From positions 806,001 to 870,000 of the forward strand of contig OZ004612.1 of assembly GCA_963924565.1 (NCBI GenBank): a DNA stretch of 64,000 nt, in the 5' to 3' direction. Each line of letters opens with the position of its first letter. The stretch's first letter is position 1. The notes under the pieces were generated by a model, which saw only the letters and a list, made by a program, of their open reading frames with translations, was not told where the DNA came from and did no database searches. This DNA comes from Ascidiella aspersa. Its lineage: Eukaryota. Positions 1 to 50,687 of the stretch are shown here, piece by piece. The position numbers were made by a program, and so were the translations under genes.

Positions 1-1190
1 CGAAATACGACGCTTTTGATGTTTACTGTGTTTTCAATATACATCAAAGTCAAGCATTCATCTATGTTGAATTTGTCAGTATCCTCCTTTAGTTGTTTTT
101 CTAAATTCTCATCGAAACGAGATTGTTGCAAGATGTCAATTGTTTTTATCTTCATTTGATCGTAGATTGCATCATCGCCACAAACAAAGCATATTTTAGT
201 TAAAATATCACCCAAGTGGTAACCGTTTTTAAGGTCAATATCCCGTCCAAGATATTCAAGCATTTCAGAAACAGGTTTGATCAGCTCAGTATCCCAGGGT
301 TTGTTCGGTGTAGCTGACCTACCAAGTGGGAACTTGCAAGCAAAAGTAACCATTCCATCAAACGAAATACCACGAGGTGTGTGCGCATCAAAGAACCAGC
401 CCTTACCAATATTTTCCTCAGGCTTATTAATGAATGGCAACGAAACGTGAGGTATTAGTGTTTCACCAAAGTTTACAACCACAACTTGAAACATCACAGA
501 CACCCAACGGAAATATTGAAGTACTTCCTCATAATCTGAACGATTTTGAACACCTTCTTCCAACAAATAGATGTGCTCGAAATCTGAATAAGGAGTGATT
601 TCATTTCTAGCAAGTGATCCCATTCCAACCAAAGCATATTTACAAGGAGCTGGACCTGTAGCTTCCACACAAAACTCCATTATATCTGCCATGAGCCATT
701 TGTATTTTTCTGTGATGATTTTTTGTAAACTCTCTATCAGAATAGTTCTACGTTGATCGGTTTCTGCAAGTGAAATTGCTTTTAGCGCAATATCCTTTAT
801 CCAACACCGAAAGTCCTTCACTTTAGTGACAGATGCTTCAACCAGTTGCTTCAAACTGTCCACACTGGTGTCATGTCTGCCAGCAAGTTGAAGAACACGC
901 GAACAAAGCTCAACGAGATCTTTCTCAACCTCAGCAACGTTGTCAGGTTTCCTCACAACAGCTGCGTTTAACAACACAGCGCTGCGAATAAGAGATATTT
1001 TCTTGTCTCTGCCCTCGGGTAATACATCAGCTATTTCGTGATATGCCCGGCCGAGTTGATGGATAACTTTGGCGGATTGTCTTACATCACGTTCCTTTCC
1101 GTTTGCGTAACATAATGACTTTAATTCCTCCGCAAGTTCAAAAGTTTTAGCTTTGTAAATACTGGCTTTAGTATCTGAGCACCCTTGCAT
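1..1190 (-). CDS. NTase(GlnD/DUF294-like)-TPR protein, copy 1, 5' part (runs off the left edge)
   Basis: ATG at 1190. Manual translation MQGCSDTKASIYKAKTFELAEELK...GMGSLARNEITPYSDFEH...VNIKSVVFR appears open to base 1 and is near-identical to the N-terminal half of the 17545..20574 ORF. It is missing from the ORF track because no stop lies in the window. Confidence 0.88.
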   Translation of the reverse strand, partial: MQGCSDTKASIYKAKTFELAEELKSLCYANGKERDVRQSAKVIHQLGRAYHEIADVLPEGRDKKISLIRSAVLLNAAVVRKPDNVAEVEKDLVELCSRVLQLAGRHDTSVDSLKQLVEASVTKVKDFRCWIKDIALKAISLAETDQRRTILIESLQKIITEKYKWLMADIMEFCVEATGPAPCKYALVGMGSLARNEITPYSDFEHIYLLEEGVQNRSDYEEVLQYFRWVSVMFQVVVVNFGETLIPHVSLPFINKPEENIGKGWFFDAHTPRGISFDGMVTFACKFPLGRSATPNKPWDTELIKPVSEMLEYLGRDIDLKNGYHLGDILTKICFVCGDDAIYDQMKIKTIDILQQSRFDENLEKQLKEDTDKFNIDECLTLMYIENTVNIKSVVF

Positions 1191-4100
1191 GTTTTAACCA
1201 ATAGTAAATTTCTAAAAGAGCAATTGCTGTAAGTAATACAATACAGAGTAAAATTAATGTTATTTACGTGTTTAACGACGTCTGCATTTCAAGCCACCAA
1301 GTACTACTGACTGTAATTCAACATACATTGTAACTACAGCGTAATATTAAATTTTAAACAATACAAGTTGGCCGGCTGTGACGCGAAAATACATAGACAA
1401 TTAGACATAGAGCCATTGTTTGTCGGCGCGAGCAACGAGCAAACATAATCCCGTAATGTTTGTTTCAAACCTTAACGACAATGTTTCAGGGCGAAGTAAC
1501 AATTTGTAGTTTAGATAAATATATTTTGGAATAACTGTTTTTAATTGTTTCTTTCGACTATTAAAACTACGGCAAAATGCACAACTATTTATAAGTTTAA
1601 TAAATAAATATATTCAAATGCGTTTGCGGTGAGTTCCTACAATTGGTAGCCTACTGTTTTGTTGATTAAATTAAGTTTAAAACTAAAATCGCTGCGTTAC
1701 ATCGAAAACAGAAAATCCGATATAAGGTTGGTTGGTTTGGGACCGATACCACCTATATTATCGGACGACAACCGATACTCAACTTGGCATCGCACAAAAG
1801 CTCCGGTTCGATGTTATCCTTCTGTATTACTGACTTGAAAATTTTGATAATTTTTGACTGAAATTACATGCACTAAAATTGATTTTTTGAAGTCCACATT
1901 TGGAACCCAGTTAAAAGGCAAGTCCTGTTGTCATAATTAAATTTACCTGACGACCAAAGTGAACCTTTCAGCTAACTGGAAGCCACAGCAACAACTTCGT
2001 CCTAAAAATCTTGTTCGATGTTCTGTATGGCGCACTCTATTGACGCACCTACAGCTGCTTTGACGTTTCTTGTACGGTCTAGCAATCTTGCGTGCTACAA
2101 TTGTGCTGGAATTTGTAAAAACCTTTTCATAAAAGGCATTTTTGTCCGTTAAATAGACGTGTTAACTAAAATATCGAAAATAAATTATGTATAGCTGCTA
2201 TTGAATACCGTATTTCGAATTTGTACTGACTTAGGAGCTGGTTTCCTAAACAGCGGAACTAATCACACTGAGGTCGCTGCGAACTTTTCTGCCGTTTCTT
2301 TGTTAGAAGCGCTTGACTGAAAACCAGGCATCCGCAAAATTTCTGTGGGGCAACCTAAGACTTGTGTACAATATGGACGAATCTGTATGTAGCTTGATAA
2401 TGAATCTCAAAGCCAAAAGAATCGAGCAAATAGACATCATCATATTAAATACGTTTTGATACAAACTTGTATCATCTTCAGTTAATGTGACTGAAATCTT
2501 ATTAAGCCTCATGAACTATAAAAGGTGAAACGCAATTTCATTCATGGCGCAATTCATTTCATAATGTATATGGGAGGCAAAACTTGTGGAATAGAATTTT
2601 ATTTAACATCAAACTTTACTTAAAATCATCAACATCTTTTGATAAAGATTTCGCGAACGCTGTGTTAAATAATTTGACTCAAACGCGAAACAAAACGATG
2701 ATGGTTGCAGAATTCGTATTTTTAGACAAACATTTTCTTGTCGTCACAAAATAAATGAAACGTGACGTCATAAAAAGAGTAACATTAAGAAAAAAGTACT
2801 TTGGTCATTCGAAAGACATGTCTTTCTCTGCATTCGGGTTGCTTTAAACATCTCCAATCTTAATACTTCGAAACGTTTTGCTTTCACCTTAGTTTAGTTT
2901 CAACACATTTGTTTGCAAACGTTCACTATAGCGGAATGCTGACGCGGATACAACTTCCAACTAAAAACCTTTAGGTGGACAGACCTCTAAACTCCTAAAA
3001 ACACTTTCTGAGTGGTGTTTTGTGGCAATATTTGTACATCAAGGCCAGGGGCAAAATTAAAAGGTTTACCGACTACACGCTGTTTGGGGAAAATTAATAT
3101 ATGTGAATCACCATTGGTCTCGGCCGAATATTATCGCCCTTTGATTTGGTTTGGGTTATTTGAAGGTTATTTTTCCGAAATTCTTAATAATTGTTGCAAG
3201 CTATTCGTCATATACGATGGGTGATATCGGTACTGGCAAAATACCAATTTAATATAGGAAATTACTGTCATAATTTGCGTTTAGTCTAGTTGCATTTTAA
3301 AACGTAGGTTAAATTTAACGAAAATTATAAGTCAACATCTGTAGGTAACTAAACTTATTTATGCTAAAACAAATTTAGGCCCTATAATAAAAACCTTTAA
3401 ACGTTTTAATTTTGCTTGTTTTTCCACAGTAATGACGTGATTTGGTATCGAATCGCGATACTTGTGTCCAAAATATCGGGTGTGTGTATCGTAATGAAAT
3501 GTCAAGTATCGTGCATCCCTACTTGTAACCAACCAACCATATTATTGTAATGAATTATTGTTTGGTCGTGTAATAAACCACATTTCTCGTTTGTATTAAT
3601 GTTGTGACACTCTGCAACGTTGTATACTGACTATAGACGCTGCCGGACTCAAACTTCATTATTTGGTGAAACTTTAATAAATGCTGGCGATTTGCTTATT
3701 TTATTTGAACACATATCGTGAACGGCGTGAGAATACAAAAACTATTATCACCAGTTCTCAACCTGTTTGATCTTAGATGTAATTAAGAAACCTAAACACG
3801 CCTTACCATCACCGCAAAATACAAAAAACACATGTTTCTATTTACCGAGCGTGTAGCGCCACAGTGCAACTTTTAGGCACAATGTCTTTTGTTTAGCTCC
3901 CTGAAGATTTTTTTCGCGTTCCGTAACATTCTTTTAGGTTACATGTTAATAGCCACATTCATTTAGTATGGGCTATAACACCAGGCTAAAATTTGCACGG
4001 ACATGTTACAACGTAATGCAATAGTGATAAAGAACCCGTATATGATGGATTCTTAATGTTGTTTAACCACGCAAAATTCAGATTAAATTAAATTATTATT

Positions 4101-6141: not shown

Positions 6142-7958
6142 TGTTTTTTTTAGTTTTTTAAAGGTTTTGTTCGATTTTAAGACTTGTTTGTTGTGCTTAG
6201 CGCGATTATGAAATGTGTGTTCGCAATATTATTGAAGCTACAAATTATACGTAACCTGGTTCTATCAAAAAACGCCCAATTGGACCAATTCTCAATCTAG
6301 GTGTTTTCGGTTAGAAGATTTTTACCAGAAATGGTGTTACTTTTGATATGTTGCATTTTATTTTTCACGTTTGTTAACTAACGCCAGCATAAACGTAAAA
6401 TCGTTGCAATTTGAATATTCTACAATCATCGAATTTCTTCGTGTTTCGCCAGCTATCTTTGTCAATAAATTACGTTTTTTGAAACTTGCTTGCTTTTGAA
6501 GACTGACAATTCATCAAACATCACTTCGTTAAAAAGTTGCACTTACCGACAACAACTGCTGACCCGGACAAGATCCAATAAGATATTTATCGAACTAATA
6601 TCCTCTCTTAGTCACGACCAGACAATTGAAGTGCTGGGAGACTTTTGGTTCTTATTTGTTGTTTAGTTTACAAAACGCGCCAACTCCAGGAATAAAGTAT
6701 CCGTCGTTTATCAAAATTTACATCAGCCGTAAGAAAACATATAAGTTGCCCCTTTTCTTTGTCTGGTGATATCATTTAGACTTTAAGAATAGACATCTAT
6801 TTAAAATGCACCTCATTTTGTAAACTGTTATTTAGATATAACGAAATGATTAGGTGCAATTAAATTGAAATTCTTCGTAGACAATTTTGTTCTTGTGTTA
6901 GAAGGCTAATATTTCGCATCTAAATGAGTATAAAGGCTGTATCAAACCTATTTTGTGTTTCAGTGAAAACCTTTAGAACATCAAAGTTAAAAACAAAATT
7001 GTTTTAATTCGAAATGGTTTTACTTTTAAAAAAGGCTTTAAATTGAAACATTATGTAATTGAGGTTCCAAATAATTCAAATTATACGACAAAAACAATTG
7101 AGTTATTGGTTTTAAAATATATTCAGCTATTAAACTATGAAATTTATGCCTGAAGATTATTTATAACTTTCTTAACAGTTAAAAAATATTGTAAGTTATT
7201 TGTGGGGATTAACTCACGGCAAGAAATGGCGTGTAGTTGCAGCAATTGCAACAATCAACTTGATTAAAGGAATGGCATTTCAGAAAATTTACATTTTAGG
7301 AAAATATATTACGATTTTGTCATAATTATAGTTATTTTATCTTGCAAAATCAACAGAAATCCGTTTATGAAAGTTTTAATGGTCGTAAGATTATGACTTT
7401 GCCGGTTTTTGCAAACACTTTCAACGTATAAATAAACTGGTCTACTAGCGGTTACTAAACTTTTGTTAACAATGCAAAACAGATTTGGTTAGAATGTTGA
7501 GTTTTTTAAAATTGTTTTAGTAATGATTTAGCCTGGATTTTTTTGTGATGACCTTTCACTGGTATTTTATAATTTTTCCTCTAGGTGTTTAGAGCACTGC
7601 TTATTTACTTGCCAGGTCACTTGAGAAAACTTTAGTTTTATTGTTTTTATTTGATCATTGCCTCGATTGTAGTCGGCGTTACGTAACAATGATGAGCGCA
7701 GCGCTGTATTGTGACGCGTGTTGCTAAACAATTCCTTCAGTTATAGAATGTGACGTCATCGCTAAGCGCGATAAACTCTGGTTCGCTTGAAATCGCTTGA
7801 TATTTAACTTGTATGCGGGAATAGGCGACCACTGCTCTACAAACTCAACTAACAACAATATTAACAAAAATATGTTTTATTAAAAATGAAAGAAAGTTAA
7901 ATTTGTCGTGATTAAAAGCTCGGCAAGTTTTATATTGCCATAGCAACGGTTAATTGTC

Positions 7959-10937
7959 TCACTCGCCAAAGGGATGGTCGATTTTGCTCCACCACTTGAT
8001 TGCTGTGTTAAAACCCTTGACTGCTTTTTTAATTAGTTTCATCTGCCAATAACATTCACTGATTCCCAAGTGACAACCTGCAATATGCATCGCTGCTTCT
8101 TCATCGGGATCCGACGTCGAATGAGGTTCAATATCTTGTTCAAAGCATTTCACCGCATTTTCAAACTTGCCAAGTTGTCGATGCGAATGACCGACATAAC
8201 AAATCGGATATGTATATTCTTCTGGTGACACTATTTTTGTGTATACTTGCTGTTTTTCGAAATAAGCAACAACCTGTTCAGGTTTGTTTAATTCAAAGCT
8301 ACAAGTAATAAGTTCCCCATAACATTTTTCAATCATGGCATCTCTCTCTACAGTTTTATGAAAACCCAAATATATTTTTTGGGAAGTTTCCAATGAGTTA
8401 TAAGCTTCCTCGTATCGATCAAGTTGGTAAAGGAAAACTCCAGCGTTATATTGTGCTTTTGCAACTAACCGCATAAAGTCATATCCCTGATGTCTATCAC
8501 ATGTGGAGTTTGCTTCTTTAAACTGATCCAACGCTAATTTGTTATTATTGTTGTTACCATTATGTATTCCAATACAACTAAATATTTCAGCTCTGGCACG
8601 AACTTTGCTTCGCTGAAATTGTTTACTTGAGGGGAAGAGTTCATAAGCTTCCTTACACAATTCACTTGCTCGTAGAAAGTTTTTCTTTTTTTACGTGAAT
8701 TTTAGCCCGAAAACGTTTGCATTTAGCAAGGAGATGACATTTGTCAGTTGGAACGTAATGCTTACTCTTTGAAATCTTTTCCGCCATTTCAATTGCTTTT
8801 TCAGCTTCTGTGTAGTTTTCCATCTCGGTGTGAGTTTGAGCAAGTTCCAAAAACGCAATTGCTGTGTCGTGATCTGAAGTTTCATTAAAAGCTCTTTCAC
8901 GACATTGAAGTAGATATTTCTCGCCGTATTTAATGCTTTCTTTGTATTTACCAATACCAAGGAAATACCTAGCAATGTATAGTTGTGCACTGTTTGAAAC
9001 ATTGTCATTTAGAACAATGTTGATTATATCGCCAGCCTTCTTAAACATACGCGTATCAACATAGAACCCGAACAACTGGCATTGGACTTCTCGTATCTCC
9101 ATATCTGTGGCGCTAAAATGCAAAGCTTGTTCGTACCATTTAATCGCATCCAACTCCATTCCAAGTTCATTGTAACCACTTCCCATCATATACAAGGTGA
9201 AAGCCCGACTTGGATCGCGGTCCTCCATAAAATCTAAAGCATGTTGAAAGCACTCTAAAGCGCATTCGAGCTGATTAACTGCATAGTGACAAATACCTTC
9301 CAAAATTCGACTATGTTTTTTTGTTCCTTTTAACTCAAATACATTTCCGCTTCTGCATTTTTCAATGACCTTTATTGCATCGTTATACAAACGTAAAGAC
9401 ATAATCGACTTTATAACACGAAACCAAGTTGATTCTTTTGGTTCGGATTGCTTGATAGCGAAAATTTGCAAAGTAGAAGCTAAAGAGAAAAATTCAACAA
9501 TTCTTGATTTTCCGAATAATTCGAGCAACAAATCATGAAATGGTTCGAATCTTGCGTCAAGATAATTGCACTGGCCGGAGTATTTGAAGTAAACCCGCAA
9601 CCTAACTTCACAGGCGAAAGCAAGTGCGAACATAAAATCCTCCGATTGTTGCTGTGATATTTGGCTTGGAGTCAATTCCCGCAGAATATCGAAAGAAGAC
9701 GACGATTTGCAATTATATCGTCTACCAAGTGCTGCTATAAACAAAGTGACGCTTCGAAATACGACGCTTTTGATGTTTACTGAGTTTCCATTATGCATCA
9801 AATTTAAGCATTTATTGATGTTAAATTTGTCAGTATCCTCCTTAAGTTGGTTTTCTGGGTTCTCATCGAAACGAGGTTGTTGTAAATGTCAATTGTTTTT
9901 ATCTTTATTTGATCGTAGATTGCATCATCGCCACAAACAAAGCATATTTTAGTTAAAATATCACCCAAGTGGTAACCGTTTTTAAGGTCAATATCCCTTT
10001 CAAGATATTCAAGCATTTCAGAAACAGGTTTGATCAGCTCAGTATCCCAGGGTTTGTTCAGGGTAGCTGACCTACCAAGTGGGAACTTGCAAGCATGTGG
10101 CATCATTCCATCAAACGAAATGCCACGAGGTGTGTGCGCATCAAAGAACCAATCTTGGTCGTTGTTCCGGTCATTAATGAAAGGCAAAGCTACGCTTGGT
10201 ATTATGGTTTCACCAAAGTTTACCACCACAACTTGAAACATCACAGACACCCAACGGAAATATTCAAGTATTTCTTCATAATCTAAACGATTTTGAACAC
10301 CTTCTTCCAACAAATAGATGTGCTCGAAATCTGAATAAGGAGTGATTTCATTTCTAACAAGTGATCCCATTCCAACCAAAGCATATTTACAAGGAGCTGG
10401 ACCTGTAGCTTCCACACAAAACTCCATTATATCTGCCATGAGCCACTTGTATTTTTCTGTAATGATTTTTTGCAAACTCTCTATCAGACTAACTCTACGT
10501 TGATCGGTTTCTGCAAGTGAAATAGCTTTTAACGCAATATCCTTTATCCAACACCGAAAGTCTTTCACTTTAGTGACAGATACTTCAACCAGTTGCTTAA
10601 AACTGTCCACACTGGTGTCATGGCTGCCAGCAAGTTGAAGAACACGCGAACAGAGCTCATCGAGATCTTTCTCCACCTCAGCAACGTCGTCAGGTTTCCT
10701 CACAACAGCTGCTTTCAACAACACGGCGCTGCGAATGAGAGATATTTTCTTGTCTCTACCCTCGGGTAATTCGTCAGCTATTTCGTGATATGCCCGGCCG
10801 AGTTGATGGATAACTTTGGCGGATTGTTTTACATCACGTTCCTTTCCGTTGGCGTAACATAATGATTTTAATTCCTTTGCAAGTTCAAAAGTTTTAACTT
10901 TGTAAATACTAGCTTTATTAACTGAGCACTCTTGCAT
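7959..10937 (-). pseudogene. NTase-TPR copy 2, frameshifted
   Basis: Three ORF pieces (9804..11009, 8662..9801, 7959..8660) are collinear with copy 3. There is a 1-nt loss near 9885, an extra T in the run at 8686-8692 and an extra G at 7971-7973. The motif reads GSLVRNEITPYSDFE. ATG at 10937. Confidence 0.8.
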
Positions 10938-12231
10938 ATTACAACTGTTGTAAATTTCTAAAAAGGCAAGTAAAGTTGCAAAATGTAGGTTAATCTTGTT
11001 ATTTACCAATTAAATGCATTCCAGATCTATTTATTATCTGAGCACCCTTGCATGTTACAACTGATTGAAATTTCTAAAAGAGCAATTGCTGTAAAGTATT
11101 GAAAAACAGATTAAAATCAATCAGGTTATTTAGCTGTTAGCTGCACTTCTGTTTTATAAACAGTCTTTAGTATATTTCAGGTTTTAGCAATTCCTTAACT
11201 AAAAGCAATCAAGTAGGCCTACTACTGACTGTAGTTTTTTCTACAATGTAACTACAGCACAATATTTTGCCGAACAATACAAGTAGGCTGGTTGTGACGC
11301 GACAATAACCAATCGTGACGCGAGAATAATATGGAAGCTGAGCCATTGTTTTTAAAAAGCTAACACCGAGCGAACATAATCCCAGTGGTTACAAACTGCT
11401 ATCAGAACAAATAGACACATTCTTTTATAATTACTTAAATACAGCGAAAAACAAAATCTGAATATACCTACACATTATATTTAGGCAAATATTCGTAAAT
11501 CTTTTATAAATATTTGTTTTTTTTAATTTCACAGTTTTATTGTAATGTGCATCTGTCTTCCTTTTACAAGTGCAAAGTAAAGTTTCAAGGTAAATTGTGT
11601 TTTTTTTTGCAAATTTTACCAAAGTTATCAAAATAGAAAAATGCCAAATAAAATAAAAAAAACACATATCAATGTAAAGTTATTGTTTTTATGCAAAACA
11701 ATTAATGTTCGCGCGAACCCTATATAAACAACAACAAGTGGTTTAAAGCGACTAACACTTAATATCATTAAACCTTATTTATTGAGAAAACTTGTGGCTC
11801 CAAAGTTTTCCAGCTCGACTCTTTCTGGTTTTTTCAATTCTATATTAATAAGCGTCAACAAAAATCGTGATAAGATAAGAAATAAAAGCGGCGAAAAGTA
11901 ACTTGAGTGAAGAAGCAATTTTGACAATAGAAATGGTAAAAAAACACATGCATCTAAAAATACAGTTGCAAAATCGTATTGACATCAAGGTATATGCAAG
12001 TGAATAACAAAACAAACATAGGAAAATGCAAGCAATGCTTACGAAAGCTTAAATATTAGCCGATGGGTAAAATACCGTGATGTGTACAATAATTAATCGA
12101 CTCCCAATCCTAGAGTGTTGAATTTTTTCCTTGGTTATTTTTGTTCATTCTGTAAAAGTTGATTCCGATTTCTCTCGCTCTACAGACTCGAGACTGAAGT
12201 AAACAAAGGAAAAGGTGTTACGTAACAATGC

Positions 12232-12405
12232 CGAGGGCTGTATTGTGACGCGTGTTGCCAAACAATGGCTTGGGTTCTACAAATGTGAGATCCTCGATAT
12301 TTTACAAACTCTGGTTCGCTTGAAATCGCTTGATATTTAACTTGTATGCGGGAATAGGCGACCACTGCTCTACCAACTGAACTATCAACAAAGTGAACAA
12401 ACTAA
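12232..12405 (-). repeat. About 170-bp conserved module with a tRNA A-box/D-arm. Other copies at about 7697-7865, 16545-16715, 34095-34185, 38675-38850 and 42345-42381+46635-46775
   Basis: Shared core gatatttaacttgtatgcgggaataggcgaccactgctctaccaactga(a/g)cta. The minus strand reads TAG(T/C)TCAGTTGGTAGAGC. Confidence 0.8.
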
Positions 12406-17544: not shown

Positions 17545-20500
17545 TTATGAAAAAATCTCGGCAAGTTTTATAATGCCGTAGCACAGGTTAATTTTTTCAT
17601 TCGCCAAAGGATGGTCGATTTTTCTGAACATCTTGATTGCTGTTTTCGAACTCTGCATTGCTTTGTCATATAGCTTCATCTGCAAATAACATTCACCACT
17701 TTGCTTGTGACAATCTGCAAGAAACATCGCTACCCTTTTATCGGAATTCGACGGCGAATGAAGTTCAATTTCTTGTTTAAAGTATTTCACCGCATTTTCA
17801 AACTTGCCAAGTTTTTGATACGAACGACCGACCAAACAAAACAAATATTTTTGTTCTTCTAATGGAACTAGTTTTATATACTCCTGTCCTTTGTCGAAAT
17901 AATCAACAACCTGTTCAGGTTTGTTTAATTCAAAAGTACAATTAATGAGTTCCCTATAACATTTTCCAATCATGACATCCCCCTCTACAGTTTTATGAAA
18001 TCGTAAGAACATTCCTAAAGAAGTTTCCAGTGTGTTATAAGCTTCCTCGTATCGATCAAGTTTGTAGAGACAAAATCCAGCATTTAATTGCGCGTTTGCA
18101 ACAAACAGCATAAAGCCATGTTCCTGATGTCCATCACATATAGAGATTGCTTCTTTAAACTGATCTAACGCTAATTTGTAATTATTGTTGTTACCATTAT
18201 GTTTTCCAATATACATATACATTTCAGCTCTGACACGAACTTTGCTTCGATGAAAATGTTTACTTGAGGGGAAGAGCTCATAAGCTTCCTTATACAATTC
18301 ACTTGCTCGTAGAAAGTTTCTCTTTTTTACGTGAAGTTTAGCCAAGAGCCATTTGCATTGAGCAGGAAGATGATATTTGTTGTTTGGAACGTAATGCTTA
18401 CTCTTAGAAATACTTTCCGCCATTTCAATTGCTTTTTCAGCTTCTGTGTAGTTTTCCATCTCGATGTACGTTTCACCAAGTTCTAGCAAGGCAAATGCTG
18501 TGTCGTGATCTGAAGTTTCATCGAAGGCCTTTTCACGACATTGATGTAGATATTTCTCGCCGTATTCAATGCTTTCTTTGTATTTGCCAATTCCACGGTA
18601 ATATTGAGAAACATATAGTTGTGCACTTTTCGAAACATTGTCGTTTAACACAAGCCTAACCATTCTACCAGCCTTTTCAAGCAGACCTTCATAAACATAC
18701 AACCCCAACAATCCACATTGGACTTTTTGTGTGAACATATCTGTGCTGCTTGAATGCAAAGCTTTTTCGTAGCATTTAATCGCATCCAAGTTCATTCCAA
18801 GTTCATTGCAACAACCTCCCATTATATTCAACATTATAGCTCGCGTTGGATAGTGGTCTTCCATAAACTTTAACGCATGTTGAAAGCATTTTAAAGCTAT
18901 TTCATGCTGATTAAGTCTATAGTGACACAAGCCTTCTGCAAAGCAACTTAGTGCTTTTGTTTCTTCAAACAAAACTATATTTTTGCATCTTACTTTTTTC
19001 ATGACCTTTATTGCTTCGTTATATAAACGTAAAGACATAAGCGAAAATATAACAAGAGGCCAGGTTAATTCCATCAATTCAGATTGCTTGTTGGTGAACA
19101 TTTGCAAAGTGGAAGCTAAAGAAAAAAATTCAACAATTCTTGATTTTCCAAATACTTCAAGCAACAAATCATGGAAAGGTTCGAATCTTGCGTCAAGATA
19201 ATCGCACTGGCCGGAGTATTTGAAGTAAACCCGCAACCTAACTTCACAGGCGAAAGCAAGTGCGAACATAAAATCATCTGATTGTTGCTGTGATATTTGG
19301 CTTGGAGTCAATTCCCGCAGAATATCGAAAGAAGACGACGATTTGCAATTATATCGTCTACCAAGTGCTGCTATAAACAAAGTGACGCTTCGAAATACGA
19401 CGCTTTTGATGTTTACTGAATTTTCATTATGCATCAAAGCCAAGCATTTACCGATGTTGAATTTTTCAGTATCTTCTTTAAGTTGGTTTTCTAAATTCTT
19501 ATCGAAACGTGGTTGTTGTAAAATGTCAATTGTTTTCGTTTTCATTTGATCGTAGATTGCATCATCGCCACAAACAAAGCATATTTTAGTTAAAATATCG
19601 CCCAAGTGGTAACCGTTTATAAGGTCAATATCCCGTCCAAGATATTCAAGCATTTCAGAAACAGGTTTGATCAGCTCAGTATCCCAGGGTTTGTTCGGTG
19701 TAGCTGACCTACCAAGTGGGAACTTGCAAGCATGTGGCATCATTCCATCAAACGAAATGCCACGAGGTGTGTGCGCATCAAAGAACCAATCTTGGTCGTT
19801 TTCCTGATCATTAATGAAAGGCAAAGCTACGCTTGGTATTATGGTTTCACCAAAGTTTACAACCACAACTTGAAATAACACAGACACCCAACGGAAATAT
19901 TCCAGTATATCATCATAATCTGAACGATTTTGAACACCTTCTTCCAATAAATAGATGTGCTCGAAATCTGAATAAGGAGTGATTTCATTTCTAGCAAGTG
20001 ATCCCATTCCAACCAAAGCATATTTACAAGGAGCTGGACCTGTAGATTCCACACAAAACTCCATTATATCTGCCATGAGCCATTTGTATTTTTCTGTGGT
20101 GAGTTTTTGCAAACTCTCTATCAGACTAGCTCTACGTTGATCAGTTTCTGCAAGTGAAATTGCTTTTAACGCAATATCGTTTATCCAACACCGAAAGTCT
20201 TTCACTTTAGTGACAGATGCTTCAACTAGTTGCTTCAAACTGTCCACACTGGTGTCATGGCTGCCAGCAAGTTGAAGAACACGCGAACAAAGCTCATCGA
20301 GATCTTTCTCCACCTCAGCAACGTTGTCAGGTTTCCTCACAAGAGCTGCATTTAACAACACGGCGCTGCGAATGAGAGATATTTTCTTGTCTCTACCCTC
20401 GGGTAATTCGTCAGCTATTTCGTGATATGCCCGGCCGAGTTGGTGGATAACTTCGGCGGATTGTTTTACATCACTTTCCTTTCCGTTTGCGTAACAGTAT

Positions 20501-20574
20501 GACTTTAATTCCTTTGCAAGTTCAAAAGATTTAGCTTTGTAAATACTAGCTTTATTAACTGAGCATCCTTGCAT
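17545..20574 (-). CDS. Intact NTase(GlnD/GlnE/DUF294-like)-TPR protein, copy 3, 1009 aa from ATG
   Basis: Uninterrupted ORF. The track's TTG start at 20646 lies at a putative 5'-UTR intron, so the first ATG at 20574 is used. GS..R.E....SD.E motif at about 19960-20010. The NIK...R / SSFDIL..L / EVRLRVY helical domain resembles GlnD/GlnE NTase C-domains. The C-terminal half has repeated TPR-like units (A...G......A...F..AL). Confidence 0.92.
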   Translation of the reverse strand: MQGCSVNKASIYKAKSFELAKELKSYCYANGKESDVKQSAEVIHQLGRAYHEIADELPEGRDKKISLIRSAVLLNAALVRKPDNVAEVEKDLDELCSRVLQLAGSHDTSVDSLKQLVEASVTKVKDFRCWINDIALKAISLAETDQRRASLIESLQKLTTEKYKWLMADIMEFCVESTGPAPCKYALVGMGSLARNEITPYSDFEHIYLLEEGVQNRSDYDDILEYFRWVSVLFQVVVVNFGETIIPSVALPFINDQENDQDWFFDAHTPRGISFDGMMPHACKFPLGRSATPNKPWDTELIKPVSEMLEYLGRDIDLINGYHLGDILTKICFVCGDDAIYDQMKTKTIDILQQPRFDKNLENQLKEDTEKFNIGKCLALMHNENSVNIKSVVFRSVTLFIAALGRRYNCKSSSSFDILRELTPSQISQQQSDDFMFALAFACEVRLRVYFKYSGQCDYLDARFEPFHDLLLEVFGKSRIVEFFSLASTLQMFTNKQSELMELTWPLVIFSLMSLRLYNEAIKVMKKVRCKNIVLFEETKALSCFAEGLCHYRLNQHEIALKCFQHALKFMEDHYPTRAIMLNIMGGCCNELGMNLDAIKCYEKALHSSSTDMFTQKVQCGLLGLYVYEGLLEKAGRMVRLVLNDNVSKSAQLYVSQYYRGIGKYKESIEYGEKYLHQCREKAFDETSDHDTAFALLELGETYIEMENYTEAEKAIEMAESISKSKHYVPNNKYHLPAQCKWLLAKLHVKKRNFLRASELYKEAYELFPSSKHFHRSKVRVRAEMYMYIGKHNGNNNNYKLALDQFKEAISICDGHQEHGFMLFVANAQLNAGFCLYKLDRYEEAYNTLETSLGMFLRFHKTVEGDVMIGKCYRELINCTFELNKPEQVVDYFDKGQEYIKLVPLEEQKYLFCLVGRSYQKLGKFENAVKYFKQEIELHSPSNSDKRVAMFLADCHKQSGECYLQMKLYDKAMQSSKTAIKMFRKIDHPLANEKINLCYGIIKLAEIFS

Positions 20575-31910: not shown

Positions 31911-34516
31911 TATTTGTATTTGTTTGGGTTTATGAGGGTTAATAGGACGGGTAAGCGTTCGATTTAGAGGACTTACTATGGGAATTAGTGATGAAGTTGA
32001 GGGTAGGTTTTTAGGTTAGTTAAATGGTATTTTAGGCCTTATTTTAAAATATATTAAGCCTTATTCTAAAAGGTTTAGGCCTTTTTTCGATAATATATTA
32101 TTGCGACACTTATTTGTTAGTCTAATTTTGGTTCAAACTTTAGTATTATTTTGACGTTGATGTTTCTCCAATTTCTGCTTTATTAGTGGAATCAATTGAA
32201 ACTTAAACCACCTAAACACAATACTTTGAGTCAGTTTAAATAAAGTTATTAGAAGCCTTTTTATTTTGCTCGACATAAACTTTGTATAATTTCACTAATT
32301 TTGATAATTTGACCTTTGTAGTTGTAACAAATTTAATTAAAACGTCTGGTTTAATTTAGACTGTTTCTGAAGTGGTGATTCTATCGTTTTATTTAATCAA
32401 AACAAATTTGATTTAACTGTTTTAATTGTGTTTTCAATTGATTTTTTGTAATATATGTGGCTAAATGCAAAGTGTTTACTCATTTCCTGGAGGTAAATGT
32501 TTTTTATCGCACGTGTTCTAGTTTCATACCATGGTAATAGGTCCATGATACTGGGGTGTAAACAAAGACGACATTTATCCATAAATAATTGAATCTAACG
32601 CAAATAAATTATATTAACTTCACGATTGTATTATTTTCACCAATAAACACAAACAGCGACGTTTACAAAAGTGATCACCCAACCAGCAATTTGCATCCAC
32701 ACATAAAAGCACCCAGACATAATATAAACAAGCACATAAATACACCTTCATACTCGATACACGCACTCGTATAATGCCGGCAAAGTAGGTTATAGTCACC
32801 GCTGTAAATATGCTGACTCGCGATGAAGTTTGAATACACCGTTGGTGCACAACAAGCTAAGGTTTGAGCCAGGGTTGTCAGATGCTGGGTTAAGATTAGG
32901 ACATTGTTGGTGTAAAATTCGGACATTTTAGGTAAAATAATATTTAGCAAGGACCTATAGTGCAAGACTAAAGGGAATCAATGGAGTTAGCTGTTCTTGG
33001 TAAGCAGTCAAAATTCCTTACAAAGTTACAAAACATTTAGTCTTTAACGGTAGTCCAATAATAAACCTTTCTGTAAATTCTATTTCCTTTTGCCAAAACT
33101 GCAACACCAATTTTCTTACTGGAATTATGTGGATGATTTAGAAAAGGCCATGTAAAAGTTATGATACCGCTGACAAGTAGAAATACTTTGCTTATAATCT
33201 ATTGTAAACCTAGCATAAAATTTATTGTAAGTTGGCCTAAATTTCAATTTGGAACTAAAGCGCCCTATACTACACCTGACGCTTTTATGGTGCACAGAAT
33301 TATTCTATAAATACGCATCAAAATCGTGCAAAGCGCGAACATTTTTTGATTTATGTTGGTAAAGTTGGTATAAACAATTTTGGAAGCCTCGTGAGCCCGT
33401 GGTTTTACTTCATCCCACAATGTTTCAAATAAATTCGGCCAAATCAGGACAGAAAGCTTACTGTTCCAATAGTTTTCAAACCGCCGGACACAGCAGTTAA
33501 AATTAGAACAATATATCCTTTTTGGTCCGAATTTAGGTAAATTCTGGTTTGAGCGTCCATTCCCCCCCACACGCGACCCCCTAGACAACCCCTTGCGATC
33601 CCCTTGGGGGTCGCGACCCCCAGTTTGAGAACCATCGGTATAGAAAAAAATATTAACAAAAAATTAATCCATTAAACAAACCAAATCTATCAATATTTTA
33701 CCGAAGCTAAGATAACTCTCGAAATGAAACCAAAATCAACTTGATTAAAGGAATGGCAATTTAGAAAAGTGACATTTTAGGAAAATATATTACGATTTTG
33801 TCATAATTATAGTTATTTTATCTTGCAAAATCAACAGAAATCCGTTTATGAAAGTTTTAATGGTCGTAAGATTATGACTTTGCCAGTTTTTGCGGACACT
33901 TTAAACGTATAAATAAACTAGTCTACTAGCGGTTACTAATCTTTTGTTTACAATACACTACAGATTTGGTTGGAATGAGTTTTTTAAGATTGTTTAGTAA
34001 TGATTTTAGCCTGGATTTTTTTGTGATGACCTTTCAACTGGTATTTTATAATTTTTTCTCTAGGTTATTTACTTGGCAGGTCACTTGAGAAAACGCTTAA
34101 AATCGTTTGATATTTAACTTGTATGCTAGAATAGGCGACCGCTGCTCTACCAACTGAACTATTAACAAAGTGAACAAACTAATGTTTTATTAAAAATGAA
34201 AGAAAGTTTAATTTTTTCGATTTTAGTTAAACAATATGTCTGGAACATCACAGATCTTCTTAACTTTATTAATAACATCCTAAAATCATATTGACGCTGT
34301 AAATCATTGTTAAAAGGCACCGGGGGTCGAAACAAACGATCGAAAAATAGTTTTTGATTTATACGCGACAAATTTAAAAGGGCAATAAACAGGAATACTT
34401 AAGTCCATTGGCGGACACCAGTTCATTCAAAGGAGCTCAATAATTAAACAGAAGTTTATTTTTTTGTGATTAAAAGCTCGACAAGTTTTATATTGCCATA
34501 GCATCGGTTAATTGTC

Positions 34517-37501
34517 TCACTCGCCAAAGGGATGGTCGAATTCTCTCCAAAACTTGATTGCTGTGTTAAAACTCTCGACTGCTCTTTTAATTAGTTTCAT
34601 CTGCCAATAACATTCACTGATTCCCAAGTGACAACCTGCAATATGCATCGCTGCTTCTTGATCAGGAACCGACGTCAAATGAAGTTCGATTTCTTGTTCA
34701 AAACATTTCACCGCATTTTCAAACTTGCCAAGTTGTTGATACGAACAACCGGCATAACAAATCGGATATGTATATTCTTCTGGTGACAATATTGTGTATA
34801 CTTGCTGTTTTTCGAAATTATTAACAACCTGCTCAGGTTTGTTTAATTCAAAGCTACAACTAATGAGTTTCTTATAACAACTTCTAATCATGTAATCTAT
34901 CTTTACCGTTTTATGAAATCCCAAAAACATTCCCAAAGCAGTCTCCAGTGTGTTAAAAGCTTCCTCGTACCGTTTTCGTTGGTAGAGACAAACTCCAGAG
35001 CTTAATTGCACATTTGAAACTAACCACATAAAGTTATGTCCCTGATGTCCATCACATGTGGAGATTGCTTTTTCAAACTGATTTAACGCTAATTTGTAAT
35101 TATTATTGTTGTAGTTATGTATTCCAATACAGAAATACATTTCAGCCCTGACAAGAACTTTACGTCGCTGAAATTGTTTACTTGAAGGAAAGAGCTCATA
35201 AGCTTTCTTATACAATTTACTTGCTCGTAGAAAGTTTTTCTTTTTTACTTGAACTTTAGCCCGGAACGCTTTGACTTCAGCAGGAAGATTATCTTTGTCG
35301 TCTGGAACGTAATGTTTGTTTTTAGAAATATTTTCAGCCATTTCAATTGCCTTTTCAGCTTCTGTGTAGTTTTCCATTGTGATGTAAGTTTGAGCAAGTT
35401 CTAGCAATGCACCTGCTGTGTCGTTATCTGAAGTTTGATCGAAGGCGTTTTCACGACATTGAAGTAGATATTTCTTTCCGTATTCAATGCTTTCTTGGTA
35501 TTCACCAATTCCATGGTAATACCGAGCAATACAGAGTTGTGCATCTTCCGAAACATTGTCTTTTAAAAGAAAGTTGAGCATGTTACCGGCCTTTTTAAAC
35601 AAATGCTCTTTCACATATAATGTCAACAATTCACATTGGACCAATTGTGTAACCATAATTGTGCTGCTTGAATGCAAGGCTTGTTCGTGGCATTTAATCG
35701 CGTCAAAGTTCATTTCAAGTTCATAGTAACATCTTCCCATCACATGCAAGGTTGAAGCCCGATTTGGATCGTGGTCCTCCATAAAATTTAAAGCATGTTG
35801 AAAGAACTTTAAAGCGGTTTTACGCTGATGAACTCTATGGTGACAATAGCCTTCCCAAATGCAACTCATTTTTTTTGTTCCTCTTATCTCAAAAATATTT
35901 TTGCTTTTGCATTTTTCAATGACCTTTATTGCTTCGTTATACAAACGTAAAGATATAATCGACTTTACAACACGAAACCAAGTTGATTCTTTTGATTCAG
36001 ATTGCTTGATGGTGAACATTTGCAAAAAGGAAGCAAGTAAGAAAAATTCAACAATTCTGGATTTTCCAAATTTTTCAAGCAACAAATCATGAAAAGGTTC
36101 GAATCTTGCGTCAAGATAATCGCACTGGCCGGAGTATTTGAAGTAAACCCGCAACCTAACTTCACAGGCGAAAGCAAGTGCGAACATAAAATCATCTGAT
36201 TGTTGCTGTGATATTTGGCTTGGAGTCAATTCCCGCAGAATATCGAAAGAAGACGACGATTTACAATTATATCGTCTACCAAGTGCTGCTATAAACAAAG
36301 TAACGCTTCGAAATACGACGCTTTTGATGTTTACTGAGTTTACATCATGAATTAAACCCAAGCATTTATCGATGTTGAATTTATCAGTATCTTCTCTAAG
36401 TTGGTTTTCTAGATTCTTATCGAAACAAGTTTGTTGTAAGATGTCAATTGTTTCCATTTTCATTTGATCGTAGATTGCATCATCGCCACAAACAAAGCAT
36501 ATTTTAGTTAAAATATCGCCCAAGTGGTAACCGTTTTTAAGGTCAACATCCCTTCCAAGATATTCAAGCATTTCAGAAACAGGTTTGATCAGCTCAGTAT
36601 CCCAGGGTTTGTTCGGTGTAGCCGACCTACCAAGTGGGAACTTGCAAGCAAAAGTAACCATTCCATCAAACGAAATGCCACGAGGTGTGTGTGCGCATCA
36701 AAGAACCAGCCCTTGCCATTATTTTCCTCGGGATCATTAATGAAAGGCAACGAAACGTGAGGTATTAGGGTTTCACCAAAGTTTATAACCACAACTTGAA
36801 ACATCACAGACACCCAACGGAAATATTCAAGTATTTCTTTATAATCTGAACGATTTTGAACACCTTCTTCCAACAAATAGATGTGCTCGAAATCTGAATA
36901 AGGAGTGATTTCATTTCTAGCAAGTGATCCCATTCCAACCAAAGCATATTTGCAAGGAGCTGGACCTCTAGCTTCCACACAAAACTCCATTATATCTGCC
37001 ATACGCCACTTGTATTTTTCCGTGATGATATTTTGCAAACTCTCTATCAGACTAGCTCTACGTTGATCGGTTTGTGCAAGTGAAATTGCTTTTAACGCAA
37101 TATCCTTTATCCAACACCGAAAAGTCTTTCACTTTAGTGACAGATGCTTCAACCAGTTGCTTCAAACTGTCCACACTGGTGTCATGGCTGCCAGCAAGTA
37201 GAAGAACACGAGAACAAAGCTCATCGAGATCTTTCTCAACCTCAGCAACGTTGTCAGGTTTCCTCACAACAGCTGCATTTAACAACACGGCGCTGCGAAT
37301 GAGAGATATTTTCTTGTCTCTACCCTCGGGTAATTCATCAGCTATTTCGTGATATGCCAGGCCGAGTTGATGGATAACTTTGGCGGATTGTTTTACTTTA
37401 CGTTCCTTTCCGTTTGCGTAACATAATAACTTTAATTCCTTTGCAAGTTCGAAAGTTTTATCTTTGTAAATACCAGCTTTATTATCTGAGCACTCTTGCA
37501 T
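34517..37501 (-). pseudogene. NTase-TPR copy 4, frameshifted
   Basis: ORF pieces 37058..37501, 36589..37038 and 34517..36661. Extra A at 37120-37123, extra GT in the (GT)n at about 36685-36692, and the same C-terminal extra G as copy 2 at 34529-34531. Confidence 0.8.
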
Positions 37502-50200: not shown

Positions 50201-50300
50201 GGTCTCTTTCTTTTCCGTTTGCAAAGCATTGTGACTTTAACTCTTTTGCTAACGGTTCAGTAAAGCTTATCAAATATTCAACAGACACAGTGTTTCCCAT
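47284..50300 (-). pseudogene. NTase-TPR copy 5 with a divergent N-terminus (MGNTVS); single late frameshift, so possibly a functional 891-aa truncated form
   Basis: An 891-aa ORF at 47625..50300 plus a C-terminal piece at 47284..47628. There is a 1-nt loss in the T-run near 47671-47675 relative to copy 3. Acceptor ctttttcacag lies 20 nt upstream of the ATG. Confidence 0.8.
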
Positions 50301-50571
50301 TTTAGGTTTAAACTGACTAGCTGTGAAAAAGAAAGTTTAACTTTCTTAAATGTTGTGAATTTAAACAAATAAAAATTTTTAATAGTAGAATATTCTAGCA
50401 AAGCTAGCCAGTCAATATTAAGATATATACATTGATTTCTCCGGCAAACCGTCGTCAGTATTTCCTAATTAATGTAAATTTCTATTAAATAAAACGTAGA
50501 ACAAATAATAATTAATATAATGTTTCTAATTAATCTTCATTCACTTTGAACATGGTGGAGAAGGCACTGAT

Positions 50572-50687
50572 TATATATTTACTTCACGTTCCTTTCCGTT
50601 TGCGTAACATAATGACTTGAATTCCTTTGCAAGTTCAAAAGTTTTAACTTTGTAAATACTAGCTTTATTATCTGAGCACTCTTCCAT
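50572..50687 (-). pseudogene. Orphan 5' fragment of an NTase-TPR gene (MEECSDNKASIYKVKTFELAKEFKSLCYANGKEREVNI*)
   Basis: Near-identical to the first ~35 codons of copies 2-4. Its upstream flank 50690-51010 matches 20575-20890. Confidence 0.85.

What the first reader, a model, noticed from the sequence alone, without database searches (positions are those of the whole stretch)
17545..19090. Sharp conserved-to-hypervariable boundary: enzyme core nearly invariant, TPR array strongly diversified
Seen: paralogs are nearly identical up to ...SRIVEFF.LAS.LQ.F..KQSE. After that they diverge at non-scaffold TPR positions while keeping the scaffold. Equivalent segments read HSRILEGICHYAVNQLECALECF (copy 2), LSCFAEGLCHYRLNQHEIALKCF (3), MSCIWEGYCHHRVHQRKTALKFF (4) and DISYLEGLCHSRLDQHELALKFF (5). 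Inference: diversifying selection on a ligand-binding groove.
Basis: partly seen in the sequence, partly recalled or inferred. Interest (0 to 1): 0.8.

Follow-up and report, generated by a model that had tools for sequence, protein, structure and literature searches.

The report
Fast-evolving binding groove on enzyme-TPR genes
A large family of animal genes joins a well-conserved protein-tagging enzyme to a repeat arm whose ligand-binding groove changes faster than neutral, as in immune-receptor families.

Summary
Window 17545-20646 (- strand) is one intact copy (c3) of a tandem family of intronless genes: at least 48 matches in this genome and 5 copies in the window. Each encodes a GlnE/DrrA-like nucleotidyltransferase domain of about 500 aa followed by 12 TPR repeats.

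Among 25 intact paralogs the non-synonymous rate steps up after ORF residue 510 (support 492-523).

- **Enzyme half:** dN 0.05, dS 0.13-0.17, omega 0.3-0.4.
- **TPR half:** dN 0.19, dS 0.27-0.29, omega 0.7-1.0.

"Nearly invariant" is too strong, because the window copies are 88-92% identical in the enzyme half.

The excess change sits on TPR positions 2, 5, 6, 9, 12 and 13, the published ligand-contact face of helix A. There omega is 1.8 (tree-free, 95% 1.36-2.41) to 2.0 (likelihood, 2dlnL 33). The rest of the array is below 1. Null simulations never approached the observed signal.

The scan had already noted this family on other DNA of this genome. The site-level selection test is new here. 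Function, whether immune-like sensing or something else, remains inferred.

The parts
17545..20574 (-). Intact copy c3. The CDS runs from the first ATG (codon 25 of the 1033-codon open frame that reaches 20646) to the stop at 17545-17547, giving 1009 aa.
   Evidence: ORF list. 100% match to G000:C6:823548-826574. AF2 model has pLDDT 84.2 and pTM 0.72.
19078..20574 (-). Conserved enzyme half (model residues 1-499): N-terminal helical bundle, Pol-beta-type nucleotidyltransferase core, and C-terminal helical domain. The fold is GlnE/DrrA-like.
   Evidence: Pfam DUF294 scores 30.6 bits against a cut-off of 21. The AF2 N-domain model has pLDDT 86.9 and pTM 0.89. The only Foldseek PDB hits with E<=1e-3 are DrrA 6yx5_B and GlnE 3k7d and 1v4a. 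Omega is 0.27-0.59 per block.
19960..20004 (-). Catalytic-type motif G-X11-D-X-E (GSLARNEITPYSDFE), model residues 191-205.
   Evidence: Translation. G191, D203 and E205 are kept in 25 of 25 paralogs. In 66 aligned family members, G and D are kept in 66 of 66 and E in 65 of 66. The motif definition comes from PMC12409994 (passage).
19078..19173 (-). Boundary zone: the last helix of the enzyme half (HDLLLEVFGKSRIVEFFSLASTLQMFTNKQSE). This is the support interval of the dN change point, whose best position is after ORF aa 510.
   Evidence: Change-point fit, translation, helix 477-499 in the models.
17551..19074 (-). TPR array (model residues 501-1008): 25 helices, read as 12 helix-A/helix-B repeats plus a capping helix. 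It is diversified at helix-A positions 2, 5, 6, 9, 12, 13.
   Evidence: Pfam TPR_12 E 5e-27. DSSP of the model. Foldseek hits to TPR superhelices. Per-position table. Class omega values.
18883..18951 (-). It corresponds to TPR repeat 2 of 12 (G8 anchor at model residue 548), positions 2-24.
   Evidence: Translation. For this repeat's concave positions the best fit is alpha 0.75, beta 3, 2dlnL 11.1.
7916..11009 (-). Copy c2, with frame breaks at c3-codons 375 and 773 and a further 1-base difference at codon 1012.
   Evidence: tblastn pieces in three frames, indel list, sequence contexts in short homopolymer runs.
34455..37582 (-). Copy c4, with frame breaks at c3-codons 150 (+1) and 291 (+2).
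47311..50726 (-). Copy c5. It has 381 extra bases at c3-codon 60, which give it an MGN-type start, and a 1-base loss at codon 908.
3..1193 (-). Copy c1. Only the enzyme half is present, because the window start cuts it.

Best explanation
c3 is one intact member of a large, tandemly expanded, recombining gene family. Each protein is a conserved GlnE/DrrA-type nucleotidyltransferase (a probable protein AMPylase) followed by a 12-repeat TPR superhelix.

Three processes acting together produce the sharp boundary:
1. Purifying selection acts on the enzyme half (omega about 0.3-0.4).
2. Diversifying selection acts on the inward-facing residues of the TPR A-helices (positions 2, 5, 6, 9, 12, 13; omega about 1.8-2). 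The packing scaffold and B-helices stay under constraint (omega 0.5-0.8).
3. Recombination or gene conversion among paralogs gives the two halves separate histories. It leaves the enzyme half about twice as homogeneous at synonymous sites.

Inferred, not shown: the TPR groove binds a variable ligand, and each paralog's specificity couples ligand binding to nucleotidylylation by the enzyme half. That would be a sensor-enzyme logic like that of immune or self/non-self receptor families.
For: **Family and integrity**
- 48 matches in the genome, and 25 of the 30 fetched loci carry open frames of at least 990 aa.
- Catalytic motif kept in 25 of 25 paralogs.
- DrrA and GlnE are the only significant fold matches.

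**Boundary**
- The dN change point lies after aa 510, at the domain junction. The dS change point is ill-defined, anywhere between model residues 195 and 551.

**Selection**
- Mixture test for sites with beta>alpha in the TPR half: 2dlnL 92.7, against 3.8 in the enzyme half. With 35-codon blocks it is 55.2.
- 12 of 12 null simulations gave 1.6-13.0.
- 36 of 512 TPR sites have posterior >=0.9, against 0 of 490 enzyme-half sites. The simulations gave 0-9.
- The per-position table shows helical periodicity.
- The literature-defined contact class has omega 1.79 (1.36-2.41) tree-free and 2.0 by likelihood with 2dlnL 33.2.
- In 10 of 12 repeats beta exceeds alpha at those positions.
- The four window copies alone give 1.79 (1.18-3.20).

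**Recombination**
- Segment trees conflict at 100% bootstrap.
- PHI z is -13 and -16.
- dS of the two halves is uncorrelated over 300 pairs (rho -0.11).

**Generality**
- In 21 of 21 same-contig pairs of distant homologues the enzyme half is the more similar one.
Against: - With plain NG86 (kappa 1) the contact-class omega is 1.25 and its interval (0.92-1.68) includes 1.
- At single sites the evidence is thin. Only 4 TPR sites reach p<0.01 in the per-site test, and 30 reach p<0.05 where about 13 would be expected if all sites were neutral.
- My codon-model code is home-made (GY94-F3x4, fixed grid, block trees) and was not checked against PAML or HyPhy.
- The simulations contain no within-block recombination.
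- I set the repeat register by hand from scaffold residues after I had seen the candidate-site list.
- No 3D coordinates were available, so 'concave face' rests on canonical TPR positions and not on measured exposure.
- No ligand, no enzymatic activity and no expression of c3 itself is shown. RNA reads lay only on the conserved half, and most were 95-99% alike, so they may come from paralogs.
Confidence: 0.75

Rival explanations
1. There is no positive selection. The TPR half is simply less constrained and less often homogenised by gene conversion, so it has drifted further.
For: dS is about 2-fold higher in the TPR half. Whole-half omega is below or near 1: 0.70 by NG86 and 0.48-1.17 by block likelihood. 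Recombination is pervasive. The plain NG86 interval for the contact class includes 1.
Against: The contact class has omega significantly above 1 once the transition bias is counted. The neighbouring scaffold codons in the same helices are below 1. The variable sites follow the helix-A ligand face. 25 of 30 loci keep full open frames. The null simulations stay far below the observed statistic.
Confidence: 0.13
2. The signal is a method artefact. Recombination within blocks, misalignment of repeats, or multi-nucleotide changes inflate the non-synonymous counts.
For: Site-model tests are known to give false positives under recombination (established knowledge, recalled). The block trees are built from short segments. 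The code is custom.
Against: The tree-free pairwise estimate agrees with the likelihood estimate. Halving the block size keeps the result. The alignment has few gaps: 1002 usable columns of 1040. Any such bias would hit the scaffold codons and the enzyme half equally, and they show omega<1.
Confidence: 0.07
3. Diversification is real but serves housekeeping sub-functionalisation: many endogenous client proteins for one modifying enzyme. It is not immune or non-self recognition.
For: TPR domains commonly bind endogenous peptides, for example HOP (PMC1261162, passage). The animal AMPylase FICD also carries a TPR domain (PMC12409994, passage). No pathogen link is shown here.
Against: Omega>1 kept up across at least 25 paralogs, tandem expansion, frequent broken copies and segment exchange are the pattern of conflict-driven receptor families. 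Endogenous client sets usually give conserved orthologous paralogs. This is inference from general knowledge, not tested here.
Confidence: 0.25

Closest known systems
NLR / STAND-type immune receptor families with hypervariable C-terminal repeats (LRR, TPR, WD40, ANK)
   Same: Large tandem expansions. A conserved N-terminal part and a C-terminal repeat array. Positive selection on the ligand face of the repeats. Exchange of segments among paralogs. Many broken copies.
   Different: Pfam finds no NACHT/NB-ARC or other NTPase switch between the two parts. The N-terminal part is an enzyme of the GlnE/DrrA fold. The repeats within one protein are old and unlike at the DNA level, so diversity is not made by shuffling near-identical internal repeats.
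Legionella DrrA/SidM AMPylation domain and E. coli GlnE (glutamine synthetase adenylyltransferase)
   Same: Best and only significant structural matches of the enzyme half. G-X11-D-X-[D/E] motif. Pfam DUF294 and a weak SidM_N hit over the same stretch.
   Different: No detectable sequence similarity to any PDB chain. The third acidic residue is E, not D. It is an animal chromosomal gene family fused to a TPR array. Activity and substrate are unknown.
HOP TPR1/TPR2A and designed consensus TPRs (ligand-binding TPR domains)
   Same: The same positions (2, 5, 6, 9, 12, 13 of helix A) that contact peptide in HOP and are hypervariable across all TPRs (PMC1261162, passage) are the fastest-changing ones here.
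   Different: There, variation is between unrelated proteins with different ligands. Here it is between recent paralogs of one family and exceeds the synonymous rate. Positions 33 and 34 are not especially variable here.
FICD/HYPE, the metazoan TPR-plus-Fic AMPylase
   Same: An animal protein that joins a TPR domain to an AMP-transferring enzyme (PMC12409994, passage).
   Different: The catalytic fold is unrelated (Fic). It is single-copy and conserved, with the TPR N-terminal to the enzyme. There is no expansion or diversification.

Membership tests
TPR repeat proteins | Tandem helix-turn-helix repeats of about 34 residues with small or hydrophobic consensus at positions 4, 7, 8, 11, 20, 24, 27 (consensus list recalled) | tested here: met
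   Pfam TPR_12 E 5.4e-27, TPR_2 E 3.6e-23 and TPR_1 E 1.4e-19. 25 alternating helices in the AF2 model. G/A at position 8, A at 20 (entropy 0.06 bits) and Y/F at 24 in the 12 repeats. Foldseek hits to TPR superhelices.
GlnE/DrrA-type protein adenylyltransferases (Pol-beta nucleotidyltransferase fold) | Catalytic G-X11-D-X-D motif | tested here: met
   G191-X11-D203-X-E205, with glutamate in place of the second aspartate. It is kept in 25 of 25 paralogs. In the wider family G and D are kept in 66 of 66 and E in 65 of 66. The motif is as stated in PMC12409994.
GlnE/DrrA-type protein adenylyltransferases (Pol-beta nucleotidyltransferase fold) | Structural similarity of the nucleotidyltransferase core plus the helical substrate-binding domain | tested here: met
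   Foldseek on the N-domain model gives 6yx5_B (DrrA) E 1.5e-6 with TM 0.61 on the target, 3k7d (GlnE) E 1.2e-5, and 1v4a E 1.4e-4. The next hit has E 0.08. This is a predicted model only.
GlnE/DrrA-type protein adenylyltransferases (Pol-beta nucleotidyltransferase fold) | Transfers AMP (or another NMP) to a protein side chain | not testable with these tools
   No biochemical data. A sequence search of the PDB found nothing.
NLR / STAND immune receptors | Central NACHT or NB-ARC P-loop NTPase switch | tested here: not met
   None of the 23 Pfam families matched at E<=0.1 is a P-loop NTPase. The 1009 residues are fully accounted for by the enzyme half and the TPR array.
NLR / STAND immune receptors | Expanded paralog arrays with positive selection on the repeat ligand face | tested here: met
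Gene families homogenised by gene conversion | Conflicting genealogies along the gene and a recombination signal among paralogs | tested here: met
   Segment trees conflict at 100% bootstrap. PHI z is -13 and -16. dS of the two halves is uncorrelated. The L026/L028 pair has dS 0.02 in the enzyme half and 0.295 in the TPR half.

The most novel reading that the evidence does not exclude
These genes are an undescribed class of animal recognition receptors. A hypervariable TPR groove captures non-self ligands (pathogen-derived or allogeneic). It directly gates a DrrA/GlnE-type AMPylase, with no NTPase switch in between. Ligand-triggered protein AMPylation would then be the immune output, and the family would be a third class of animal AMPylases.
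Probability: 0.3. Interest if true: 0.85.

Novelty: new variant of a known kind. Interest (0 to 1): 0.62.

Why it matters
A conserved enzyme joined to a repeat arm whose binding face evolves faster than neutral is the evolutionary signature of recognition receptors. Here it appears on a domain pair, a GlnE/DrrA-type adenylyltransferase plus TPR, that is missing from the accounts of animal AMPylases I could read. The 2025 review passages name only FICD and SelO. Two full-text searches found no paper on the family.

The result turns 'odd bacterial-looking gene family' into a testable hypothesis. It gives named residues to mutate (the motif G191/D203/E205) and a defined set of 72 groove codons expected to carry specificity. 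It also shows that any formal selection analysis of this family must allow for recombination, because the two halves of the gene do not share one tree.

Tried and rejected
**Leads that went nowhere or were rejected**
- A sequence search of the enzyme half against the PDB found only chance hits at E 2.2.
- Foldseek with the full-length model returned only TPR superhelices and said nothing about the enzyme. I therefore folded the N-domain alone.
- I considered generation of diversity by shuffling near-identical internal repeats, as in fungal NLR-like genes, and rejected it. There are no TPR-period tandem or direct DNA repeats in 17300-20700.
- Divergence does not track physical distance between copies (Spearman 0.10, p 0.09).
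- Flanks of paralogs mostly do not align, so they could not serve as a neutral yardstick.
- RNA evidence was weak. 18 reads came from about 6% of one run, none lay on the TPR half, and 16 of 18 were only 95-99% alike. I make no claim that c3 is expressed.
- Model coordinates are not exposed to scripts, so I could not measure surface exposure.
- PAML and HyPhy are not installed, so I wrote a GY94-F3x4 grid likelihood instead.
- I did not verify the organism. Its names are coded. The only named relatives are two sea squirts, and the earlier notes that call it a sea squirt are unchecked by me.
- Supplementary files of papers were not consulted. They are unlikely to bear on these claims.
Full report
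**What is there**

The window has the base composition of a eukaryote (GC about 35%). It holds five minus-strand copies of one gene, about 10-13 kb apart:
- c1 at 3-1193, cut by the window start.
- c2 at 7916-11009.
- c3 at 17545-20646.
- c4 at 34455-37582.
- c5 at 47311-50726.

Only c3 is an uninterrupted frame: 1033 codons, with the first ATG at codon 25, giving 1009 aa. The other three have breaks:
- c2 has 1-base changes at c3-codons 375 and 773.
- c4 has +1 at codon 150 and +2 at codon 291.
- c5 has 381 extra bases at codon 60 and a 1-base loss at codon 908.

Most of these breaks lie in short homopolymer or dinucleotide runs. I cannot tell real slippage from assembly error.

DNA identity to c3 is 85-88% along the whole coding region and mostly stops at its ends.

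The window is G000:C6:806001-870000. The 308.6-Mb genome gave 48 matches from 154 first-look candidates, so the copy number is a lower bound. Most matches lie on contig C6 between 0.7 and 2.4 Mb. Of the 30 loci fetched, 25 carry open frames of at least 990 aa.

**What the protein is**

Pfam finds DUF294 (a putative nucleotidyltransferase) at ORF aa 170-242, scoring 30.6 bits against a cut-off of 21. It finds strong TPR families from aa about 566 onward (TPR_12, E 5.4e-27). There is a weak SidM_N hit and no NTPase domain.

AlphaFold2 with a 60-sequence alignment gave pLDDT 84.2 and pTM 0.72. The model has a mixed alpha/beta enzyme half up to model residue 499, then 25 helices.

The enzyme half folded alone gave pLDDT 86.9 and pTM 0.89. 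Its only PDB fold matches with E<=0.001 are:
- Legionella DrrA in complex with Rab8a, 6yx5_B, E 1.5e-6.
- The two adenylyltransferase domains of E. coli GlnE, 3k7d and 1v4a.

The next hit has E 0.08. A sequence-only search of the PDB finds nothing.

c3 carries G191-X11-D203-X-E205 at window 19960-20004. The passages I read of a 2025 review give G-X11-D-X-D as the catalytic motif of the DrrA/SidM adenylyltransferase domain, and name FICD and SelO as the eukaryotic AMPylases (PMC12409994). G191, D203 and E205 are kept in 25 of 25 paralogs. In 66 aligned family members, G and D are kept in 66 of 66 and E in 65 of 66.

The enzyme half is therefore most likely an active GlnE/DrrA-type nucleotidyltransferase. 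That it AMPylates proteins is an inference from fold and motif.

The database search returned 900 relatives at E<=0.001, from the 8000 candidates scored. The best are 33-44% identical. The only two named ones are from the sea squirts Ciona intestinalis and Clavelina lepadiformis.

**The boundary**

In the alignment of 25 intact paralogs (1040 columns), mean column entropy is 0.08-0.35 bits for c3 aa 53-379 and 410-497. It is 0.65 in a short variable patch at aa 380-409. After about aa 500-530 it is 0.46-1.34 bits.

A two-rate change-point fit places the non-synonymous step after ORF aa 510, with a support interval of 492-523. That interval translates as HDLLLEVFGKSRIVEFFSLASTLQMFTNKQSE. The synonymous rate has no sharp step: its support interval runs from model residue 195 to 551.

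For the window copies alone:

| Measure | ORF aa 63-520 | ORF aa 521-1033 |
|---|---|---|
| Amino-acid identity | 88-92% | 60-71% |
| dN | 0.04-0.06 | 0.17-0.25 |
| dS | 0.12-0.19 | 0.28-0.35 |

**Rates in the two halves**

Pooled NG86 over 300 pairs:

| Half | dN | dS | omega |
|---|---|---|---|
| Enzyme | 0.062 | 0.174 | 0.35 |
| TPR | 0.188 | 0.268 | 0.70 |

Per pair, dS is higher in the TPR half in 282 of 300 pairs. The medians are 0.292 against 0.132 for dS, and 0.197 against 0.042 for dN.

Block-wise likelihood used 70-codon blocks, each with its own tree, under GY94-F3x4. It gives omega 0.27-0.59 in the seven enzyme-half blocks. In the TPR blocks it gives 0.85-1.17, except 0.48 for aa 870-940.

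So the contrast has two components: about 2-fold deeper synonymous divergence, and about 2-fold higher omega.

**Recombination**

Trees of the enzyme half, the TPR half and the two TPR sub-halves conflict with full support:
- L024 and L028 pair at 100% in the TPR tree but sit in different groups in the enzyme-half tree.
- L005 pairs with L009 at 100% in the first TPR sub-half, and with L012 at 96% in the second.

A pairwise-homoplasy (PHI-type) permutation test is strongly significant in both halves. z is -13.1 and -15.9, and 0 of 300 permutations are as low.

Across 300 pairs, dS of the two halves is uncorrelated (Spearman -0.11). L026/L028 have dS 0.02 in the enzyme half and 0.295 in the TPR half.

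The paralogs are therefore mosaics, and a single-tree site test would be unsafe. All my likelihood tests use block-specific trees, and I added tree-free estimates.

**Where the changes fall**

Using the DSSP helices of the model and the c3 sequence, I fixed the register of 12 repeats by hand. I used the scaffold residues (G/A at position 8, A at 20, Y/F at 24) to do so. The anchors are at model residues 509, 548, 586, 623, 656, 700, 745, 790, 833, 877, 916 and 960.

I did this after I had seen the list of candidate sites. The anchors rest on conserved residues, not variable ones.

The per-position table shows a helical pattern:
- Positions 2, 5, 6, 9, 12, 13 have mean entropy 1.37-1.79 bits and dN 0.34-0.49.
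- Positions 3, 4, 7, 8, 10, 11, 14, 16, 19-21 and 28 have entropy 0.06-0.83 bits and dN 0.01-0.18.

The passage I read in Magliery and Regan (PMC1261162) says that positions 2, 5, 9, 12, 13, 33 and 34 are the most variable across TPRs and lie on the concave face. It also says that positions 2, 5, 6, 9, 12 and 13 contact the peptide in HOP TPR1 and TPR2A. I first recalled that class from memory and then confirmed it in that passage. Positions 33 and 34 are not unusual here.

**Is it faster than neutral?**

For the 72 codons of the contact class:
- Tree-free omega is 1.25 (bootstrap 95% 0.92-1.68) with plain NG86.
- It is 1.79 (1.36-2.41) when synonymous sites are counted with kappa 2.3, the value the likelihood fits give.
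- The best single (alpha, beta) pair is (1, 2), against the best alpha=beta fit. That gives 2dlnL 33.2 with 70-codon blocks and 27.7 with 35-codon blocks.
- Beta exceeds alpha at these positions in 10 of 12 repeats.

For the controls:
- The other 440-441 TPR codons give omega 0.60-0.81 tree-free and 0.75 by likelihood, significantly below 1.
- The enzyme half gives 0.33-0.41.

A general discrete mixture over a 12x12 (alpha, beta) grid fits better than one restricted to beta<=alpha. The gain is 2dlnL 92.7 in the TPR half and 3.8 in the enzyme half. It is 55.2 for the TPR half with 35-codon blocks.

Twelve data sets simulated under the fitted beta<=alpha model on the same trees gave 2dlnL of 1.6-13.0. 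They gave 0-9 sites with posterior >=0.9. The observed values are 92.7 and 36.

Of the 36 candidate sites, 19 lie in the 72 contact codons (odds ratio 8.9, p 9e-9). Several others lie one or two helical turns upstream on the same face of extended A-helices. That last point is my reading against the anchors.

The four window copies alone give the same picture: contact class 1.79 (1.18-3.20), rest 0.83, enzyme half 0.43.

**Results that weaken the case**
- Single-site support is thin. In the per-site test only 4 TPR sites reach p<0.01. 30 reach p<0.05, where about 13 would be expected if every site were neutral.
- The plain NG86 interval includes 1.
- The code is my own and unvalidated.
- The simulations lack within-block recombination.
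- No coordinates were available to measure which residues face the groove.

**Generality**

In 21 of 21 pairs of distant homologues that share a 'longest contig' length, the enzyme half is more similar than the TPR half. Identities are 0.77-0.97 against 0.49-0.96. I use the shared contig length as a proxy for paralogs of one other genome. The asymmetry is therefore a property of the family, not of this cluster.

**Expression**

One RNA run with the same species label was sampled at about 6%. It gave 18 reads, all between 18908 and 20515 in the enzyme half. 16 of the 18 were only 95-99% alike and 10 lay only partly on the stretch. Almost all had the first mate on the + strand.

This fits low-level sense transcription of some family member in a stranded library. 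It does not show that c3 is expressed.

**How it most likely works**

Shown:
- Conserved catalytic motif and fold.
- A constrained TPR scaffold.
- Faster-than-synonymous change on the canonical ligand face.
- Mosaic exchange among paralogs.

Inferred:
- Each paralog's groove binds a different ligand.
- Binding is coupled to nucleotidylylation, either of the bound protein or of a downstream target.
- Conversion freely homogenises the enzyme half. Conversion in the TPR half is either selected against or impeded by divergence, which leaves deeper synonymous divergence there.

The logic resembles immune or self/non-self receptor families. But the family is not an NLR, because no NTPase switch is present. 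Its internal repeats are also not near-identical.

**Novelty**

Full-text searches for DUF294 with TPR found two papers. In one of them, the only one I opened, I read only the DUF294 passages, which list DUF294_C with GlnD/GlnE-type domains and do not mention animal genes. A six-term search on nucleotidyltransferase, TPR, expansion, tunicate, amphioxus and AMPylation found none.

Earlier notes of this scan had already flagged the family on other DNA of this genome as an undescribed AMPylase-TPR family that 'changes like an immune-sensor family'.

What is added here:
- The quantified boundary.
- The separation of the dS and omega components.
- The recombination evidence.
- The site-class test on the ligand face.

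**Verdict**

This is a new variant of a known kind of system. Interest is 0.62.

Noticed in passing
window 17416-17530 vs 17562-17676: A 115-nt direct duplication at 83% identity. The last part of the c3 coding region is repeated just downstream of the stop codon. tblastn also sees a 39-aa C-terminal fragment there.
   Followed up: partly
L026/L029, L019/L025, L003/L004 (genome loci): Very similar paralog pairs (94-99% identity) lose all similarity abruptly within about 20-30 nt of the stop codon, while similarity can run on upstream. The exchanged or duplicated unit seems to end at the 3' end of the coding region.
   Followed up: partly
25 intact paralogs; window copy c5 at about 50300: There are two N-terminal types: MQ/E-x-CS and MGN-x-VS, the latter resembling a myristoylation motif. 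Among the fetched paralogs they group differently in the enzyme-half and TPR trees.
   Followed up: partly
window 25060-25549: A GC-richer stretch (0.435 in 24001-26000) that is open in three + frames and encodes a short repeated peptide (…[11 protein letters not shown]…). It is probably a minisatellite and not a gene.
   Followed up: no
window 27160-27405 (+): A short open frame with an EGF-like cysteine pattern (…[23 protein letters not shown]…). It may be an exon of an unrelated gene between copies 3 and 4.
   Followed up: no
window 7682-7858, 12118-12392, 38568-38885, 46635-46766 and c3 flank 16532-16710: A dispersed element of about 180-320 nt (80-86% identity) recurs downstream of or between the gene copies.
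   Followed up: no
window 17434-20649, DNA runs X1 and X4: Summed word depth of Logan contigs over c3 reaches thousands in X1, as expected for a multi-copy family. A differently labelled organism (B, run X4) holds an 838-nt contig with 21 differences and 9 gaps over the enzyme half only.
   Followed up: no
c3 ORF aa 380-409 (window about 19420-19509): A short variable patch inside the otherwise conserved enzyme half. Entropy is 0.65 bits, dS 0.33, and the block mixture test gives 2dlnL 11.8 with alpha fixed. It corresponds to a helix-loop region of the C-terminal helical domain.
   Followed up: no
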